Source: Octopus sinensis (Eukaryota). Taken from it: a stretch of 43,833 bases of DNA. How positions within the stretch are numbered: the first letter of the stretch is position 1; each line of letters opens with the position of its first letter. Position numbers and translations under genes: made by a program. The notes beneath the pieces are model-generated. The model made no database searches. It was given only the letters and a program-made list of their open reading frames with translations, and was not told the DNA's origin. The stretch covers positions 1 through 43,833 of the forward strand of contig NW_021834948.1 of assembly GCF_006345805.1 (NCBI RefSeq), written 5' to 3'. This document shows, piece by piece, positions 4,505-40,328 of the stretch.

Positions 4505-4554
<50 letters not shown>

Positions 4555-4555
4555 T
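4417..4555. repeat. (AAT/AAC)n microsatellite, tail of adjacent SINE
   Basis: Direct reading; abuts the 3' end of the minus-strand SINE. Confidence 0.95.
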
Positions 4556-4757
4556 TCTACTGGAGGCACATTGCCTCAAATTTGAGGTGAAGGGACTACA
4601 TCGATCCCAGTGGTTTACTGGTACTTAATTTATCGACCCCGAAAGGATGAAAGGTAAAGTCAAGCTCGGCACAATTTGAACTCGGAACGTAGCGAGGGGC
4701 GAAGTACTGCGATGGATTTCGTCCAGCGTGCTAACGGTCCTGCCAACTCGCCGCCTT
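4555..4757 (-). mobile_element. tRNA-derived SINE, family A, full length
   Basis: Minus strand reads aaggcggcgagttggcagga (A-box-like) ... gagttcaaattg (B-box-like) ... tttcatcctttcggggtcgataaattaagtaccag ... (att)n tail; about 10 further copies in the window. Confidence 0.9.
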
Positions 4758-4764
4758 TATTATG

Positions 4765-6280: not shown

Positions 6281-6455
6281 ACGGGCATACTGGAGCAACG
6301 CGTTTAGTCGAACAAATCGGCGCTAGGACTTAGTTTTTGTAAGCCTAGTGCTTATTCTATCGGTATATTTCGCTGAACCGCTAAGTTACTAGGACGTAAA
6401 CACACCAACATCAATTATCAAGCGATGTTGGGGGGGAGCAAACACAGACACACGT
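6281..6455 (-). mobile_element. SINE family B, 3' half
   Basis: Similar to 32130-32310 and 33284-33510 (actggagc...tagtcgaa...taagcctagtgcttattct...cgctaagttac...acaccaacatc). Confidence 0.8.
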
Positions 6456-6714
6456 ATACATACATACATACATACATACACAATCATATATATATATATA
6501 GGGAGTTAGGGCGAAAACGACCTGTCTCCAGCATGGTTGAAGTGCTGATAGCTTCAAAAAAAAAATACCAAAAACTCCAGCTAAATATATAAAATTTTTA
6601 TAGCATACCTACTACTTGATAGAATCAATATACACATACACACACACCACAACACACACACACGTATATATATATATATATTATATATATACATATATAT
6701 ATATAATATATATA

Positions 6715-16110: not shown

Positions 16111-16319
16111 TGGCTTCAAATTTTGCCACAAGGGCAGCAAAAGAGGACGAGTCGATTAAATCGACCCTCTCAGTGTTCAACTTGTACTTAATTTATCGAC
16201 CCCGAAAGGATGAAAGGCAAAGTGGACCTTGGCGGAATTTGAACTCAGAACGTCACGGCAGACGAAATACCGCGAAGTATTTCGCCCAAGTGCTAACGAT
16301 TCTGCCAGCGGGCTGCCTT
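16111..16319 (-). mobile_element. SINE family A, full length
   Basis: Clear A-box-like ctggcagaatcgttagc, B-box-like gagttcaaattcc and core tttcatcctttcggggtcgataaattaagtac on the minus strand. Confidence 0.92.
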
Positions 16320-18145: not shown

Positions 18146-19050
18146 CATATATATATGTCTCTCTTCTCTTTCTTTTCTCTTCCTCTTTCTCTCTCCTCTC
18201 TCTCTCCTCTCCCTTGATATATATATATATACATACTTGCATACGCGGTGGTTAGGCGGAAGTTCTTTCACCAAATTGAGATGTGTAACAAATATTTTAC
18301 GTCAAAGAAATTTAAGGATTCCGGAAACAGCAATCTTAACATCATTGATGAAGCAGTGAATAGAAAGGGGAAAGGGGGGAGATAAAAAGACGTAGAGAGG
18401 TGGGATGAGAAGGAGGAGGAATTGGAAGATGAGGATGAGGCGAGGCGTGAGGGAGGCGAGAGGATGTGGAGGAGGAGGTGGAGGAGGAGGAGGAGGAGGA
18501 GGTAGAGTAGAAAGGTGAGAGAGATACAGACAAGCGGTGTGAAAGAGAGAGCGAGAAATATAATGATACTGGAGATTAGGAAAATGAGAATAAAGCGAAG
18601 AACAACAACAACAACATGTACAACAAATTCAACAGTAACAACATCATCGCCAACAAAGCATGTTCAGCTGCACCATTACCAACACCATCACCACCATCAA
18701 CAACAGCAACAACAGCAACAACAATGATAACACTAACAACACGGAATATAAGAATATTATCATCAATGACATCAATAACGTTATGAACAAGACCAACAAT
18801 AATAACAAGATGGCGACGAGGAAAATGTGAGGAGATATACAGGAAGCTGACTGGTTAATCAAGCAATTGTGTTCGCTATTATTGGTTTATATAACTGTGA
18901 ATGGGAGTTGAAATTGTGATTATTGGCAGTAAGAGTTGCGCCGGGCATTTTACTGTCTTCTTTCTATCATAAGTCTTTCATAGACCAGCGAAAATAAAAA
19001 TAAAAGATAAACATTCAGTATTATTATTATTGTTATTATTATTATTATCA

Positions 19051-19208
19051 ATGCTTAGTTGCATTTCGTCCGTCCTTACGCTCTGAGTTCAAATTCCGCC
19101 AAGATCGTCTTCACCTTTCATCCCTTCTGGGTCGATAAATTAAGTACCAGTGAATCACTGGGGGTCGATATAATCGACTAGTCCCCTCCCCTCAAATTTC
19201 GGGCCTTA
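19051..19208 (+). mobile_element. SINE family A, 5'-truncated
   Basis: ctgagttcaaattccgcc ... cctttcatcccttctgggtcgataaattaagtaccag ... tcccctcccctcaaatttcgggcc. Confidence 0.9.
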
Positions 19209-19211
19209 ATA

Positions 19212-19250
<39 letters not shown>

Positions 19251-19274
19251 GTTGTTGTTGTTGCTGCTGTTTGT

Positions 19275-22299: not shown

Positions 22300-22490
22300 T
22301 ATATAGTTGAAATTGAGAGAAAAGCAAAATACGAAGATAGGTGTATGGGCAACAAGTAGAAGTATTAGTTTGACGCTCGGGAAAGTGAAACAGTCTTTTA
22401 TATTTCGAGCCTACGCTCTTCAACAGAAAGAAATAACAGGAAATAAACAGGGAGAATGAAAAAAGCTTGTAGATTTAGCGATCAACCATT
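22300..22490 (-). mobile_element. Dispersed repeat resembling a Penelope-like element terminal repeat
   Basis: Homologous to 33520-33690 (gtattagt..acgctcgggaaa..gaaa...tttcgagcctacgctcttc.acagaaagaaa). The Penelope assignment rests only on the hammerhead-like motif. Confidence 0.55.
22394..22431 (-). ncRNA. Minimal type I hammerhead-like motif, variant core CUGUUGA
   Basis: Minus strand UCUUU-CUGUUGA-A-GAGC-GUAG-GCUC-GAAA-UA-UA-AAAGA: stem I 5 bp, stem II 4 bp, GAAA, UH site. Confidence 0.4.
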
Positions 22491-26684: not shown

Positions 26685-27843
26685 TATCTATATGCATATG
26701 TGTATGTGTTTATTCATATGGTCTTTCGTGTTCCTATGACATTAAATACACAACTGCCTACCCACAAGTTATATAAATATTCAAATAAAGTTTGATCATT
26801 TAGTTTCTGTTTTATTAATAGGATTTCTAGCTTCACATCCGTCTTTGTATGAAATACGAAGGTTTGTAACTAGTTACAGACCCCAACACACCCCACGCCC
26901 TTGATATTATAAAGAATTACTAAGAGCCGGATTATCGTGTTTTAAATATTAGCCGGAGGAAGAGACTTTAAACAACAACACCTACAACAACAGTTACATA
27001 CACATTGAACAGACCAATATCACCCTTCTATATTTCATCCGTGTAAATCTTATCAAATATAAAATTGGACATTCGACAACTATACAATACCGGCGGCTTA
27101 TTATGTACTTACTATTTGCTGATGTTGCATTAAATTTCCATAGAGAACGGGGACAAATACTAGATTACAACATTATTGTATTAAATAGAATCCTCCTGCT
27201 ACACCACACACACATATACACGCACGCCACACACACAAACACACACGCACACACACACACACAACACATACACACACACACACAATGACGATTAAAGACA
27301 CACAGAGCACCCACACACAACGACGAAAACAAATATGGGATAATTATTCATGGATTTTTCTTTCAATAAATCCAAGGCATTGATTAGCTGCCAAAAATGA
27401 TGTACGGAAAACACGCTAAACATTTTCAAATAACAGTCATTATCAGTCACATTGCAGTTTTGATAATTCGAGAGAAAAACCCAAGAGACCAGAACTGATC
27501 GCCATAAGAAAACTAACCAAGATTCGGCCCATTATGTGTGTGTGTGTGTGTTTGTCCGTTTAAAAGTATCTCAAATGAATTCTTATGAGAAAGGAGCAGA
27601 ATTCATCCACTAAGAGTCATTAATTTAATAAATGAGAATCTTTCTCTTTCGCCCCTTCTCTTTCACTCTTACTTCAAGTAGTAACGTAAATGTGTAGTAA
27701 CGTACACACACACACATATACACATACACACCCACACCTACAAACATACATACATACTTACAAACATATACATATATATAGACACATACAAATGCGCGTA
27801 TGTACACCCACATACATACGTTTATATGTATACATATATTTCT

Positions 27844-27982
27844 GTATTTCGTCTGTCCTTACGTTCTGAGTTCAAATTCCGCCGTGATCTACTTTGCCTT
27901 TCATTCTTTCGGAGTCGATAAATTAAGTACCTGTAACGTATGTGGTCGATCTAATCGACTGGCACCCACCCACAAAATTTCC
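27844..27982 (+). mobile_element. SINE family A, 5'-truncated
   Basis: ttacgttctgagttcaaattccgcc...ctttgcctttcattctttcggagtcgataaattaagtacc. Confidence 0.9.
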
Positions 27983-31869: not shown

Positions 31870-32082
31870 TTAGAAAATACGTGTAGGTTCGTCCTGTAAT
31901 TTGAGGGGAGGGGATAGTCGATTAAATCGATCTCAGTACTTGACTGGTACTTCATTTATCGGCCCCGAAAGGGTGGAAGGCAAAGTGACCTCAGCGAAAT
32001 TTGAACTCAGAACGTAAAGGCAGACGAAATGCCGTGAAGCGTTTCGCCCGGCGTGTTAACGACTCTGCCAGTTCGCCGCCTT
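31870..32082 (-). mobile_element. SINE family A, full length
   Basis: Minus strand aaggcggcgaactggcagagtcgttaac ... ttctgagttcaaatttcgc ... ggccgataaatgaagtaccag. Confidence 0.92.
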
Positions 32083-32129
32083 TAATCCTTTCTAATATAC
32101 GCACATATATCTTTTACCTTCTTCTTGTT

Positions 32130-33283: not shown

Positions 33284-33865
33284 GTGCTTGTTTCCGTTAC
33301 TAGACTGCGGCCATGCTAGAGCAACGCTTCGAAGAAATTTGAGTCGAATGAATCGATCATTGTACTGATTGCTTTTTGTTGTTGTTGTTGTTGTTGTTTT
33401 TTTACACCAGGTGCATATTATATATTTCTCCTTTGCCGAACTGCTAAGTTACTGCAACATAGGCACACCAATATCAGTTTTCATGCGGTGGTGGGAGACA
33501 AACATACACACACACACATATAGGGGGAGAATTCACAAAAAAAATGACGGAGACAGGTGGTGTAGACAACAAACAGATGTATTAGTAATAACGCTCGGGA
33601 AATGAAAAAAACTTTAACATTTCGAGCCTACGCTCTTCCACAGAAAGAAACAAGGAGAGAAAATAAACAATGTGTAGTGGCTATAAAGATTGTGCCTATA
33701 TATATATACGACAGGATTTTTTCATTTTCCGTCTACGAAATCCACTCACAAGGCTTTGATCGGCGCAAGGCTACAGTAGAGGACACTTGCTCGCCCAAAG
33801 TGCCATGCAGTGGGACTGAACCCGGAACAATGTGGTTGAGAAGCAAGCTTCTAACAACACGCCCA
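33284..33865 (-). mobile_element. SINE family B, full length, interrupted by the hammerhead-bearing repeat
   Basis: 3' half at 33284-33510, insert at about 33520-33690, 5' half at 33708-33865 (ttccgtctacgaaatccactcacaaggc ... gggactgaacccggaac..tggttgagaagcaagctt). Confidence 0.85.
33611..33648 (-). ncRNA. Minimal type I hammerhead-like motif, variant core CUGUGGA
   Basis: Minus strand UCUUU-CUGUGGA-A-GAGC-GUAG-GCUC-GAAA-UG-UU-AAAGU. Confidence 0.4.
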
Positions 33866-33981
33866 GACATACAGACATACACACAGACACACAGACAAGC
33901 AGGCAACAGTCAGACACATTGACACACAGACAGGCAGGTAGGCATACAAACAGACAAAGATACACACACACACACACACAC

Positions 33982-36381: not shown

Positions 36382-36710
36382 TTATAATTTATGCGTCTCG
36401 AAACAAACCGACAGAAATTCTAAAAATCCGTTATTACCGTATTGGTCCAATTTCGGGGTTAATTCAAAGAATTCTCCCTCTTCAGCAATAAATACGTGGG
36501 ATATAAGTGAAATACTTATTCATAACCATGGAAAGTAAGCACTAAGTCCTGTGCTGCTTTTTCCATGGGTATGAAAAGTATTTCACTTATATCCCACGTA
36601 TTTATTGCTGAGAGGGGAGAATTATTTTAATTAACCCCGAAATTGGACAATACGGTAATAACGGATTTTTAGAAATTCTGTCGGTTTGTTTCGAGACGCA
36701 TAAATTATAA
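36382..36710. mobile_element. Foldback/MITE-like element: about 160-bp inverted arms, 8-nt spacer
   Basis: Left arm ttataatttatgcgtctcgaaacaaaccgacag...ccatggaaagtaagcac is the reverse complement of the right arm gtgctgctttttccatgg...tttcgagacgcataaattataa with about 11 differences by eye; TTATAA at both ends. Confidence 0.75.
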
Positions 36711-36861
36711 TGATATGACAATTTTATATTTTTTTCGAATATTTGGCATTAGAATTTTTCTTTTGCCCTATCTGGTAATTATTTATAAATTAACCTTTAA
36801 AGGTTTATTTTTGATATGCTGGCTATATATATATATATTTATATATATTATAGCTTCCCGT

Positions 36862-36896
<35 letters not shown>

Positions 36897-36998
36897 TATA
36901 TAATATATATAATATATATATAATATATATGATATATACAGATAGATAGATGGATTTGGATAGGCGAGCGAGACAGACAGGAAAGATTGTATATATGT

Positions 36999-37057
<59 letters not shown>

Positions 37058-37074
37058 GTATGTATGTATGTATG

Positions 37075-37141
<67 letters not shown>

Positions 37142-38029
37142 CTGTTATTTGCTTTCTATATAATCATTCATAAAATGATCCACCATTCACAGAAGAAGCA
37201 AACACTACATATAATTAATTACTAAAAAGATTTTGCAAAGATTTGTCTGACAGTGACTTCGAAGTTTCCGTAGTAGCCGACTTCTTCGAACCAATTTTTC
37301 TCTTTTTTCACTCGTTATAATTATATCCATTTCGCATGCCATATCTTACCACATGTTATGAATCCCAGCAAAATCGATAGATACACAATTTAAATTCCGT
37401 TAAAAACGGAGCCCCAGTATGGCCGTACTCCAGCACCAGTGACAGAATAACAGAATATAAGAATATAATGAAAGAATTACCATAGAGGTCACACAGTGTG
37501 ACAATATGGCGTCATTTCCTCTCTTAGAAATTATGAATTGCTGAGGTCTACAGTGGAAATATAAATTTTACAGTTCTCATCGCTAATATGTCATCCATTT
37601 TGTTTGTTTTGTACCACGTGATCGCTGCCTTTCTTCCCCTCTCTCCTTCTCAGACACAAACTGTTTTCGACTTTATTTATCCGTTTCTGTGGCTCTTTCG
37701 ACATCCCTGTCTCTCTCTCTCTTTCTATCTCTATCTCTCTACCGATCTATCTACTTGTGTATCTATCTGTCTATTTATCTATCTATCAATGCATCTACCT
37801 ACATATGTTTGCATATATATATATATATATATATATACATATGTCTAGCTTTTGTATTTGTCTGTCTAACTATTTGTCTTTTTCACTCCTACAAATTTGA
37901 AAATATTTCAAATACATTCACCTCGATGTCAGAATATTGTTTCAGATATTTTTAATACATCATCAATTATATGTGTGCAAATATATACATACATATATTT
38001 ATATATGATATATGATATTACATGATATA

Positions 38030-38154
<125 letters not shown>

Positions 38155-38367
38155 TATATATATTTATACATACACACATATATACGTGTTGTTAGTAGAA
38201 ACAAGCTTCTTACCAGTTAGCCACGCTACGCCGAAAAGTGCAACTTATTTACACAATAAATACTCTAAGGGATATTTTGCGAGGTAAATATTGTGAGGGT
38301 AAAGATCACGCTGAGGAATTTCCTGACGATGGGTCATTTTATGAATGTGCAGCAGATGCAGCAGGGA

Positions 38368-38450
38368 GACTCGAGGACTGAGAGTTTCGTTCATTGGCAC
38401 TTATCAGACTTTGATGGGTGCCAATTCACGAAACTTTCGGATCATGAGTT
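38368..38450 (+). ncRNA. Candidate microRNA precursor hairpin
   Basis: Unbulged 39-position stem (28 Watson-Crick, 7 G:U, 4 mismatches), 5-nt terminal loop, CTGC (CNNC) at 38454. No match to a miRNA family I recognise. Confidence 0.45.
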
Positions 38451-39016
38451 ATTCTGCTACATACTCTGTGTTATTTTTGCTAAATGCTAATAGACACACA
38501 CACACACACACAAACATACATACAAAATATATATATATATATATATATAAACGATATAGATATAGGTAGATAGAGAGATAGATGGGCATATGCATGCATA
38601 CGTACATACATATATACGTACATAAAATATATACATAGATACAAGCATACATATGTACATACACACACACACATACATACATACATGCATGCATACATAC
38701 ATGTATACATAAATACATGAATACATACATACATGCATACATACATACATACATACATACATGCATACATACATACATACATACATACATACATACATAC
38801 ATACAAATGTGCGTACTACAAAACATAGGTATATTGAAGCATATGTGATAATGATAGACAGGGAGAGATGTATATATTTGCGTGTTTGTGTTCATATATT
38901 TTTCGAGTGTGCGCGCCTAAACAATTCAGCGATGAAGGGAGCGAGGAGTTGGACCAGAAGGGGAGCGAGAAGGGGCAAACAAAACATGGAGCTGTAGACA
39001 GTTGTATATATGCCTG

Positions 39017-39053
<37 letters not shown>

Positions 39054-39305
39054 CAAGACAGACAGACACACACACAGACATACATACGTGTGAATGAGCG
39101 TGTGTTGTACAAGTGTAGAGACCTCTGCGTGTTGTGTATCAATAATATTCTAGTTTGACCTCGTTAGATGTGTCTGATCATGTTTAGCCCCGGCGCGGTG
39201 ATTAAACCAGGAGTTGGTGGCGAAGGGGGGTGAGAATTGATGAATGATCAGCGTAATCATGTGTGGCTAACTCTCTCAATTCTCTCTTCCTTTATCTCTT
39301 TCTTT

Positions 39306-39336
<31 letters not shown>

Positions 39337-39470
39337 CATAAGTATGGCTAAAATATATATATATATATATAATATATATATATATCCCTGCATATATACA
39401 TATATTATAGATATGTATGTATATATATATATATATGTATATACATATGTGTGTCTGTGTTCTATATCTA

Positions 39471-39550
39471 TATATGTACGTATTTCTGTATATACGCTTT
39501 CCAAATATACATTTATTTGGAAAGCGTATATACAGAAATACGTACATATA
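39471..39550. repeat. Perfect 37-bp inverted repeat with 6-nt loop
   Basis: tatatgtacgtatttctgtatatacgctttccaaata - tacatt - tatttggaaagcgtatatacagaaatacgtacatata. Confidence 0.95.
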
Positions 39551-40328
39551 CATATGTATACGTACATATGTATACGTACATATACATATGTATGATTACA
39601 TGTATGTATGTATGCTTGCATGTGTATAGATATATATATTTGTAGATTTGTGAGTCTTCGTGTATGATTAAATTGTTTTTGTACATACATACCGATGTAC
39701 CTACACATACACACATACACACATACACACACACACATATGTATATATAATTCCTGGATTATCCTTCATTCACTGTTCAAACTAACTAATAGCAAAAGAA
39801 AGAAACGAAATAGAAATAAAAAACAAATTAACGAATCAATATATAAACAAAGAACTACACTAAACAGAATAAATTAATAGGAAACTAACACGTCTAGTGG
39901 TCTCTTATAAAAACTTTACAACGAGTGTACTTGATATGTATGCATGACTTCACGAATTTACTTGAGTGTGGCAACTTGCAAACGGGCAATAAACAAGCGG
40001 AACATAAACTACACATATAAACAGAGTCTTATGTATTTATGTAATTAATATATATATATATATATGTATATATATATGTACACGTACGTGTGTGTAGGTT
40101 TGTACGGAGGTATATTTGGACTATAATTTAGGCGGAGGTACATAAAATATATATATTATATTATCTATATATATTTATATATATTATATATGGAGATATA
40201 TATAGAGTTAATATATATATATAATATATCTATATATATAGATATATATATATTATATGTATATTATATAGAGTATACTATATATATAGAGGTATATATA
40301 TATAATATATATATATATAATATAATAT

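What the first reader, a model, noticed from the sequence alone, without database searches (positions are those of the whole stretch)
38368..38457. Candidate novel microRNA gene with strand-specific G:U pairing
Positions 38368-38406 pair with 38412-38450 without bulges: 28 Watson-Crick pairs, 7 G:U, 4 mismatches, 0 A:C. A neutrally decaying DNA palindrome should give G:U and A:C about equally, so 7:0 suggests selection on the plus-strand RNA fold. One canonical register gives 5p AGUUUCGUUCAUUGGCACUUAU (38383-38404) and 3p GGGUGCCAAUUCACGAAACUUU (38416-38437) with 2-nt overhangs, a 13-15-bp lower stem and CNNC 17 nt downstream. I do not recognise the family; coleoids have many lineage-specific miRNAs (established). 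The cut sites are inferred.
Basis: partly seen in the sequence, partly recalled or inferred. Interest (0 to 1): 0.75.

Follow-up and report, generated by a model that had tools for sequence, protein, structure and literature searches.

The report
Single-copy octopus hairpin, unproven microRNA
A real, very stable 51-base-pair hairpin sits in non-coding, repeat-rich octopus-like DNA, but it is too long and too fully paired for a textbook microRNA precursor, and most likely it is an old inverted duplication that has not been shown to make any small RNA.

Summary
Positions 38368-38406 pair with 38412-38450 without gaps: 28 Watson-Crick pairs, 7 G:U, 4 mismatches and 0 A:C. The plus strand folds at -55.9 kcal/mol (z -9.7), and the minus strand at -41.9.

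That makes 51 pairs (36 WC, 9 G:U, 1 A:C, 5 mismatches) around a 5-nt loop.

This weakens the microRNA reading in three ways:
- There is no single-stranded basal junction about 13 bp below the proposed Drosha cut.
- The CNNC motif is itself base-paired (probability 1.0).

The G:U excess is only nominally significant (p 0.016-0.021). The 2-nt overhangs follow automatically from any bulge-free stem.

No known family matches in Rfam, and no arm or seed appears in the cephalopod miRNA papers and supplements I could search. No second copy exists in the window or in 62 kb of Octopus bimaculoides DNA.

The window contains no coding sequence. It is full of microsatellites and SINEs shared with O. bimaculoides, and two other palindromes lie within 2 kb of the hairpin on either side.

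Small-RNA reads and orthologous loci could not be reached. My best reading is a decayed inverted duplication (about 0.55). A true microRNA has a probability of about 0.1.

The parts
38356..38462 (+). Whole hairpin: 51-position ungapped inverted repeat around a 5-nt loop
   Evidence: It has 36 WC, 9 G:U, 1 A:C and 5 mismatches. As a 107-nt RNA it folds at -56.9 kcal/mol, z -10.5. The minus strand folds at -44.6.
38356..38406 (+). 5' arm
   Evidence: Every position pairs with position 76818 minus its own coordinate.
38407..38411 (+). Predicted terminal loop (GACUU, 5 nt)
38412..38462 (+). 3' arm
38383..38400 (+). Cleanest part of the duplex (pairs with 38418-38435): 16 WC plus one 2x2 U.C/C.U internal loop and no G:U
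   Evidence: There are 2/18 non-WC positions here against 13/33 in the rest of the stem (Fisher p 0.053).
38374..38377 (+). Weak spot in the lower stem (A.A, G-C, G.U, A.A against 38441-38444).
   Evidence: Pair probabilities are 0, 0.57, 0.44 and 0.
38454..38457 (+). CNNC (CUGC), 17 nt 3' of the proposed 3p end, but base-paired with 38361-38364
   Evidence: pair probability 1.0. The chance expectation is about 0.09.
38187..38226 (+). Fragment of a SINE tail at the start of the 310-bp unique island that holds the hairpin. The hairpin itself is not part of the SINE.
   Evidence: Island positions 2-41 match about 10 SINE copies in the O. bimaculoides locus L007, and nothing beyond position 41 matches.
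38474..38478 (+). Run of five T, 12 nt after the base of the hairpin
   Evidence: Noted only. It is common by chance in DNA with about 32% G+C here.

Best explanation
This is an old, decayed inverted duplication: a DNA palindrome of about 51 to 60 bp per arm around a 5-nt spacer. It lies in a non-coding stretch of an octopus-type genome that is rich in microsatellites and SINEs.

Inferred origin: a fold-back or template-switch event during replication or repair copied a short unique segment in inverted orientation. The two arms then diverged by point substitutions only (15 of 51 positions, Jukes-Cantor distance about 0.37 between arms).

If the plus strand is transcribed, the RNA would form a 51-bp, bulge-free hairpin. 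That would be a generic double-stranded RNA, and so a possible ADAR or Dicer substrate. Nothing shown here indicates that it is processed into a microRNA. On this reading the G:U excess is a nominal fluctuation, or a mild mutational strand bias, picked out after the fact.

Shown: the palindrome, its extent, its uniqueness in 106 kb, its context and its non-canonical geometry. Inferred: the origin by inverted duplication and the lack of function.
For: - The arms align without a single gap over 51 positions, with weaker pairing out to 38347/38471, as expected of two copies of one sequence.
- The transition-type to transversion-type mismatch ratio is 10:5, which is ordinary for neutral decay.
- The neighbourhood makes palindromes. 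A near-perfect palindrome with 45-nt arms lies at 39463-39558 (z -16, equal energy on both strands). A 329-bp fold-back lies at 36382-36710 (91% self-complementary).
- The window has no credible coding sequence. Its long ORFs are all microsatellite translations.
- It carries SINE families shared at 80-88% with Octopus bimaculoides.
- The geometry does not fit a Microprocessor substrate: a 51-bp helix, a 5-nt loop, a paired CNNC, and no basal UG or apical UGU.
- CpG observed/expected in the hairpin (0.75) is no higher than in the window (0.84).
Against: - The 9 G:U to 1 A:C ratio favours the plus strand (p 0.021; 7:0 gives p 0.016), worth about 14 kcal/mol.
- Flank G+T content is only 0.52-0.58, so a strong mutational strand bias is not evident.
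- Non-WC positions avoid the central 18 bp (p 0.053).
- There is no indel despite about 19 substitutions, with P about 0.05-0.22 under usual indel:substitution ratios.

Together these hint at some constraint on the helix. No target-site duplication and no donor copy was found that would document the duplication event.
Confidence: 0.55

Rival explanations
1. A young, lineage-specific microRNA, or a proto-microRNA emerging from an inverted duplication. It would be transcribed from the plus strand and cut by Drosha about 22 bp below the apical loop, near 38383/38437. Dicer would then produce 5p and 3p species close to those the reader proposed.
For: - The hairpin is very stable and asymmetric between strands.
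- G:U versus A:C is 7:0, or 9:1 over the full stem.
- The cleanest duplex coincides with the proposed miRNA/miRNA* region.
- The sequence is single-copy in the 43.8-kb window and in 62 kb of O. bimaculoides DNA.
- Octopus vulgaris has 90 novel miRNA families, so undiscovered or lineage-specific ones are plausible (PMC9699675).
Against: - The stem is 51 bp instead of about 35 bp, with pair probability 1.0 at the -13 position where a basal junction should be.
- The CNNC is paired, and UG and UGU are absent.
- The loop is 5 nt.
- No Rfam miRNA family matches. The best hit is MIR2646 at 24.8 bits against a gathering score of 245.
- No arm k-mer occurs in the supplements of the octopus or Euprymna miRNA papers.
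- Candidate 8-mer seed sites were searched for ten cut positions (twelve 8-mers). None is listed as a seed in the stored parts of the O. vulgaris target tables, and one (AACGAAAA) is explicitly labelled 'Non-seed kmer'.
- Base rates are unfavourable. Complex short-loop palindromes occur at roughly 1-3 per 100 kb here, which means tens of thousands per genome, against about 150 miRNA genes.
Confidence: 0.1
2. A hairpin-shaped mobile-element remnant, such as a miniature inverted-repeat or fold-back element, with other copies elsewhere in the genome.
For: - The element is palindromic along its whole length.
- It sits next to a SINE fragment, among other repeats, and 1.6 kb from a 329-bp fold-back.
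Against: - No second copy appears in 43.8 kb plus 62 kb, either by blastn with word size 7 or by a covariance model.
- No target-site duplication is visible at the palindrome ends.
- This sample would detect only families of roughly 10^4 copies or more.
Confidence: 0.15
3. A structured double-stranded RNA element inside an intron or UTR that is selected for pairing but is not a microRNA. It could be an ADAR editing substrate or docking site, or a short hairpin source of endogenous siRNAs.
For: - The evidence of constraint is the same as for the miRNA reading: the G:U excess, the absence of indels and the clean centre.
- A 51-bp uninterrupted helix suits ADAR or Dicer better than Drosha.
- In octopus most A-to-I editing lies in introns and 3'UTRs, which are rich in hairpins (PMC9699675).
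Against: - There is no evidence that the locus is transcribed, and no gene can be placed around it.
- The statistical signs of constraint are weak.
Confidence: 0.12

Closest known systems
Canonical animal microRNA precursor (Drosha/DGCR8 substrate, MirGeneDB-type gene)
   Same: It is an imperfect stem-loop with G:U pairs on one strand and no large bulges. Two arms of about 22 nt can be drawn with 2-nt offsets. It is single-copy as far as sampled.
   Different: The stem is 51 bp, not about 35 bp. There is no single-stranded basal junction about 13 bp below the cut. The loop is 5 nt. The CNNC lies inside the helix, and UG and UGU are lacking. It matches no family model, and there are no read or conservation data.
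Short genomic palindromes or inverted duplications
   Same: The two arms align without gaps around a very short spacer. Decay is by substitutions with an ordinary transition:transversion ratio. A younger, near-perfect palindrome lies 1 kb away (39463-39558), in unstable DNA rich in microsatellites.
   Different: The mismatches are biased towards G:U on one strand, and they spare the centre. A purely neutral palindrome does not predict either.
MITE-derived or fold-back-derived hairpins (for example miRNA-like hairpins from miniature inverted-repeat elements)
   Same: The whole length is palindromic and the setting is rich in repeats.
   Different: No other copy is present in 106 kb, and no target-site duplication is visible.
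Long hairpin RNAs and ADAR substrates in cephalopod introns and UTRs
   Same: It is a long uninterrupted duplex (over 30 bp) in non-coding DNA of an octopus-type genome.
   Different: Transcription and editing were not shown. The stem is much shorter than classical hpRNA loci.

Membership tests
Canonical animal microRNA gene | Hairpin with at least 16 bp of complementarity between the two arms | tested here: met
   45 of 51 positions pair, z -9.65.
Canonical animal microRNA gene | Stem of about three helical turns (about 35 bp), with a single-stranded basal junction about 13 bp below the Drosha cut | tested here: not met
   The helix is 51 bp. Pair probability is 1.0 at -13 (38370) and at least 0.86 down to 38356/38462. 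The rule is as stated in PMC6004053. Those rules were derived for human Microprocessor, and their transfer to octopus is assumed.
Canonical animal microRNA gene | Flexible terminal loop (about 8-10 nt or more) | tested here: inconclusive
The predicted loop is 5 nt. The loop-size threshold comes from my own knowledge.
Canonical animal microRNA gene | Primary-sequence motifs: basal UG at -14/-13, apical UGU at 22-24, CNNC at about +17 in the single-stranded 3' flank | tested here: not met
   The -14/-13 positions read AC and positions 22-24 read UCA. CUGC is at +17 but paired at probability 1.0, and chance gives about 0.09. These motifs are helpers rather than requirements. About 79% of human pri-miRNAs have at least one (PMC6004053).
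Canonical animal microRNA gene | 20-26-nt reads from both arms with homogeneous 5' ends and 2-nt offsets | not testable with these tools
   No small-RNA read data can be reached.
Canonical animal microRNA gene | Conservation of the arms above the loop and flanks in related species | not testable with these tools
   No cephalopod genome can be searched by DNA. Attempts through protein space and the contig collections found nothing usable.
Any described miRNA family | Match to a family covariance model or a published mature sequence | tested here: not met
   Rfam 15 gives no hit at gathering score, and the best is 24.8 bits against 245. No arm k-mer occurs in PMC or bioRxiv texts or in the cephalopod miRNA supplements. 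No candidate seed site is listed as a seed in the stored O. vulgaris tables. MirGeneDB itself could not be queried.
MITE / fold-back transposable element | Multiple dispersed copies | tested here: inconclusive
   There is one copy in the 43.8-kb window and none in 62 kb of O. bimaculoides DNA. The sample is too small to exclude families below about 10^4 copies.
MITE / fold-back transposable element | Target-site duplication flanking the inverted repeats | tested here: not met
   No direct repeat is present at 38347-38356 versus 38462-38471 or nearby (by inspection).
Inverted duplication (DNA palindrome) | Two arms homologous in one ungapped register around a short spacer | tested here: met
   There are 51 positions, a 5-nt spacer and 0 indels.

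The most novel reading that the evidence does not exclude
The hairpin is a newly born, octopus-lineage small-RNA gene caught in transition. On this reading an inverted duplication, transcribed from the plus strand, is being shaped by selection (G:U tolerated, A:C purged, no indels, clean central duplex) into a Dicer- or Drosha-processed precursor. Its stem is still about 16 bp longer than a mature microRNA hairpin.
Probability: 0.1. Interest if true: 0.4.

Novelty: new member of a known kind. Interest (0 to 1): 0.2.

Why it matters
If it were a real microRNA, it would add one more lineage-specific gene to the large coleoid microRNA expansion that has been linked to the octopus nervous system. 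Because its stem is over-long, it would also be a rare example of a microRNA at an early stage after birth from an inverted duplication. If it is only a decayed palindrome, as I think more likely, it is ordinary. Its main value is then as a caution: in octopus DNA, which is full of microsatellites and palindromes, a stable hairpin with a nominal G:U excess is not enough to call a microRNA.

Tried and rejected
1. Known RNA family. Rfam on the whole window at gathering score gave nothing. The permissive scan of 38250-38560 gave only generic long-hairpin hits far below threshold.

2. Resemblance to the miR-96/183/263 family. The 5' arm contains UUGGCAC and the 3' arm contains AAUUCAC. This was a lead from memory and I rejected it. 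The two motifs lie on opposite arms and are not at a 5' end in any register of this fold. No mir-96, mir-182, mir-183 or mir-263 model scored at E below 10.

3. Published sequences. Arm 13-17-mers appear in no PMC or bioRxiv main text except two chance primer matches. Arm 10-12-mers are absent from the supplements of PMC9699675 and PMC8125070. PMC11701709 has no held supplement. Candidate seed-site 8-mers were searched for ten cut positions (twelve 8-mers). Eleven are absent from the stored parts of the O. vulgaris tables and one is listed there as 'Non-seed kmer', while the Let-7 control site is present. This is inconclusive, because the files were cut when stored and the sequences are kept in MirGeneDB.

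4. Reaching orthologues through protein space. The 65-aa ORF across the hairpin and a six-frame concatenate of the island found no homologue. Three window ORFs are not on record as genes.

5. Collection scans. A pattern covering both arms found 0 matches in metagenome and viral contigs. The 3p 20-mer found 0 in prokaryote genomes. The 5p 20-mer found 6 metagenome contigs, all unrelated bacterial-type sequence with no hairpin, so these are chance matches.

6. Membership in a SINE. Only island positions 2-41 are SINE-derived, and the hairpin is not.

7. Paralogues or a cluster. There are none by blastn with word size 7 or by a covariance model, in the window or in L007.

8. Mirtron. There are no splice-site-like ends (by inspection).

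9. Comparator hairpins. The other two short-loop hairpins that passed my complexity filter turned out to be TG/CA microsatellite pairings, so they are poor controls.

Full report
**What is there.** Positions 38368-38406 and 38412-38450 pair without gaps. The quoted 5p, 3p and CNNC strings are all present.

As RNA, the plus strand of 38358-38467 folds at -55.9 kcal/mol. Dinucleotide shuffles average -24.6 +/- 3.2, which gives z -9.65, and none of 200 shuffles folds as well. The minus strand folds at -41.9, z -7.3. The hairpin and its strand asymmetry are therefore real.

The helix continues in the same register down to 38356/38462. Over 51 positions it has 36 WC, 9 G:U, 1 A:C and 5 mismatches. 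Folded inside a 221-nt context, every one of these pairs keeps a probability of at least 0.86. The exceptions are the 1x1 mismatches and a weak patch at 38374-38377. The predicted terminal loop is 5 nt.

**Fit to a microRNA precursor.** A Microprocessor substrate is a stem of about three helical turns between two single-strand/double-strand junctions. [quoted passage not shown] A basal UG lies at -14, an apical UGU at about 22 nt, and a CNNC at about 17 nt in the 3' basal segment (PMC6004053).
- Position -13 (38370) is paired with probability 1.0, and the helix runs 27 bp below the cut.
- Positions -14/-13 read AC, and positions 22-24 read UCA.
- The CUGC at +17 pairs with 38361-38364 at probability 1.0. 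A CNNC at +16 to +18 is expected by chance about 9% of the time at this composition.
- The 2-nt overhangs carry no information, because every register of a bulge-free stem gives them.

These rules come from human Microprocessor, and applying them to octopus is an assumption.

**Signs of selection.** Three weak signals exist.
- The G:U versus A:C imbalance gives a two-sided binomial p of 0.016 for 7:0 and 0.021 for 9:1.
- Non-WC positions avoid the central 18 bp: 2/18 against 13/33, Fisher p 0.053.
- No indel has accumulated despite a Jukes-Cantor distance of 0.37 between the arms, with P about 0.05-0.22 under common indel:substitution ratios.

Several things argue against reading much into them. 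The window holds 177 inverted-repeat pairs. A symmetric scan found other arms with G:U to A:C ratios of 5:0, 3:0, 0:3 and 6:3. Flank G+T content (0.52-0.58) does not show a strong mutational strand bias. CpG observed/expected is 0.75 in the hairpin against 0.84 in the window.

**Context and organism.** The window has no credible coding sequence, and every long ORF is a translated microsatellite. There are no tRNA genes and no Rfam family at gathering score.

The window carries dispersed SINE-like repeats. A query made from their translations hit one protein among 5.8 billion, 'uncharacterized protein LOC106868243 [Octopus bimaculoides]'. The locus of that gene, L007, is 76 kb of CM046612.1, of which 62 kb is not N. 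It shares several repeat families with the window at 80-88% identity.

The hairpin lies in a 310-bp unique island (38186-38495) between TA and CA/TA microsatellites. The first 40 bp of the island are a SINE tail, and the hairpin is not part of that SINE.

**Copy number and family.** I found no second copy of either arm, of the island or of the fold. This holds in the window and in L007, by pattern search, by blastn with word size 7 and by a covariance model built from the hairpin. This excludes only very abundant repeat families.

No Rfam miRNA model matches. The best is MIR2646 at 24.8 bits against a gathering score of 245, which is a generic long-hairpin match. No arm k-mer occurs in the searchable literature, or in the supplements of the octopus and Euprymna miRNA papers.

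I searched candidate 8-mer seed sites for ten cut positions (twelve 8-mers) in the stored parts of the O. vulgaris target tables. Eleven are absent and one, AACGAAAA, is listed as a non-seed k-mer. The Let-7 control site is present. MirGeneDB itself could not be queried, so novelty relative to it remains open.

**Neighbouring palindromes.** A near-perfect palindrome with 45-nt arms lies at 39463-39558 (z -16, the same energy on both strands). A 329-bp fold-back with 91% self-complementarity lies at 36382-36710. Together with the hairpin, these are the only complex palindromes I found in 106 kb, and all three fall within 3.2 kb. Either this stretch is prone to forming inverted duplications, or the three belong to one unit. 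I could not tell which.

**Verdict.** The microRNA interpretation cannot be settled here, because reads and orthologues are out of reach, and the testable anatomy does not fit a canonical precursor.

Base rates also weigh against it. Complex short-loop palindromes occur at roughly 1-3 per 100 kb in this DNA, which means tens of thousands per genome. About 2% of those would show a 9:1 imbalance by chance. An octopus genome has only on the order of 150 microRNA genes; this count is from my own recollection, since one search reports only 94 novel genes in 90 novel families (PMC9699675).

My estimates are:
- decayed inverted duplication without demonstrated function: 0.55
- mobile-element remnant: 0.15
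- selected double-stranded RNA element that is not a microRNA: 0.12
- genuine young microRNA: 0.10

Noticed in passing
window 36382-36710: A 329-bp fold-back element, 91% self-complementary, with arms of about 135-155 nt around a spacer of roughly 58 nt. It is made of complex sequence, is single-copy in the window and is absent from the O. bimaculoides locus L007. It resembles a fold-back or MITE-type element.
   Followed up: partly
window 39463-39558: A near-perfect palindrome: 45-nt arms, 93% complementary, 6-nt spacer. As RNA it folds at -57.7/-57.9 kcal/mol on the two strands, z about -16. It looks like a very recent inverted duplication.
   Followed up: partly
window 36382-39558: The three complex palindromes (the fold-back, the candidate hairpin and the near-perfect palindrome) are the only ones found in about 106 kb examined. 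All three lie within 3.2 kb. This suggests a local hotspot for palindrome formation, or one composite unit. It remains unexplained.
   Followed up: no
window 4510-4759, 16142-16319, 19050-19256, 27843-27981, 31898-32084: Copies of a SINE-like repeat of about 200 bp (containing GGAATTTGAACTCAGAACGT). They are 74-82% identical to each other and 80-88% identical to copies in O. bimaculoides CM046612.1. A translated copy matches O. bimaculoides LOC106868243. This identifies the window as octopus-type DNA.
   Followed up: yes
window 6282-6500, 22326-22449, 33396-33871: Further repeated segments shared within the window and, for 6282-6500 and 33697-33871, with L007 at 78-87%. They include a second dispersed repeat family. 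A 40-bp tail fragment of that family forms the start of the hairpin's unique island, at 38187-38226.
   Followed up: partly
window 38474-38478: A run of five T lies 12 nt downstream of the hairpin base, with an AT-rich TAAATAT about 70 nt upstream (38287-38293). It looks superficially like a Pol III terminator and TATA box, but such strings are common by chance in this AT-rich DNA.
   Followed up: no
window 1-43833: The window has no credible protein-coding ORF, no tRNA and no Rfam family. The long ORFs are translations of (TA)n, (CA)n, (TATC)n and trinucleotide microsatellites. G+C rises to 0.42-0.44 at 30-36 kb, where GC skew swings from -0.24 to +0.32.
   Followed up: partly
L001-L006 (metagenome contigs): The 20-mer GTTTCGTTCATTGGCACTTA occurs exactly in six JGI metagenome contigs of two unrelated kinds: G+C-rich soil-type contigs and an AT-rich set of three near-identical contigs. 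None has the second arm, so these are chance matches.
   Followed up: yes
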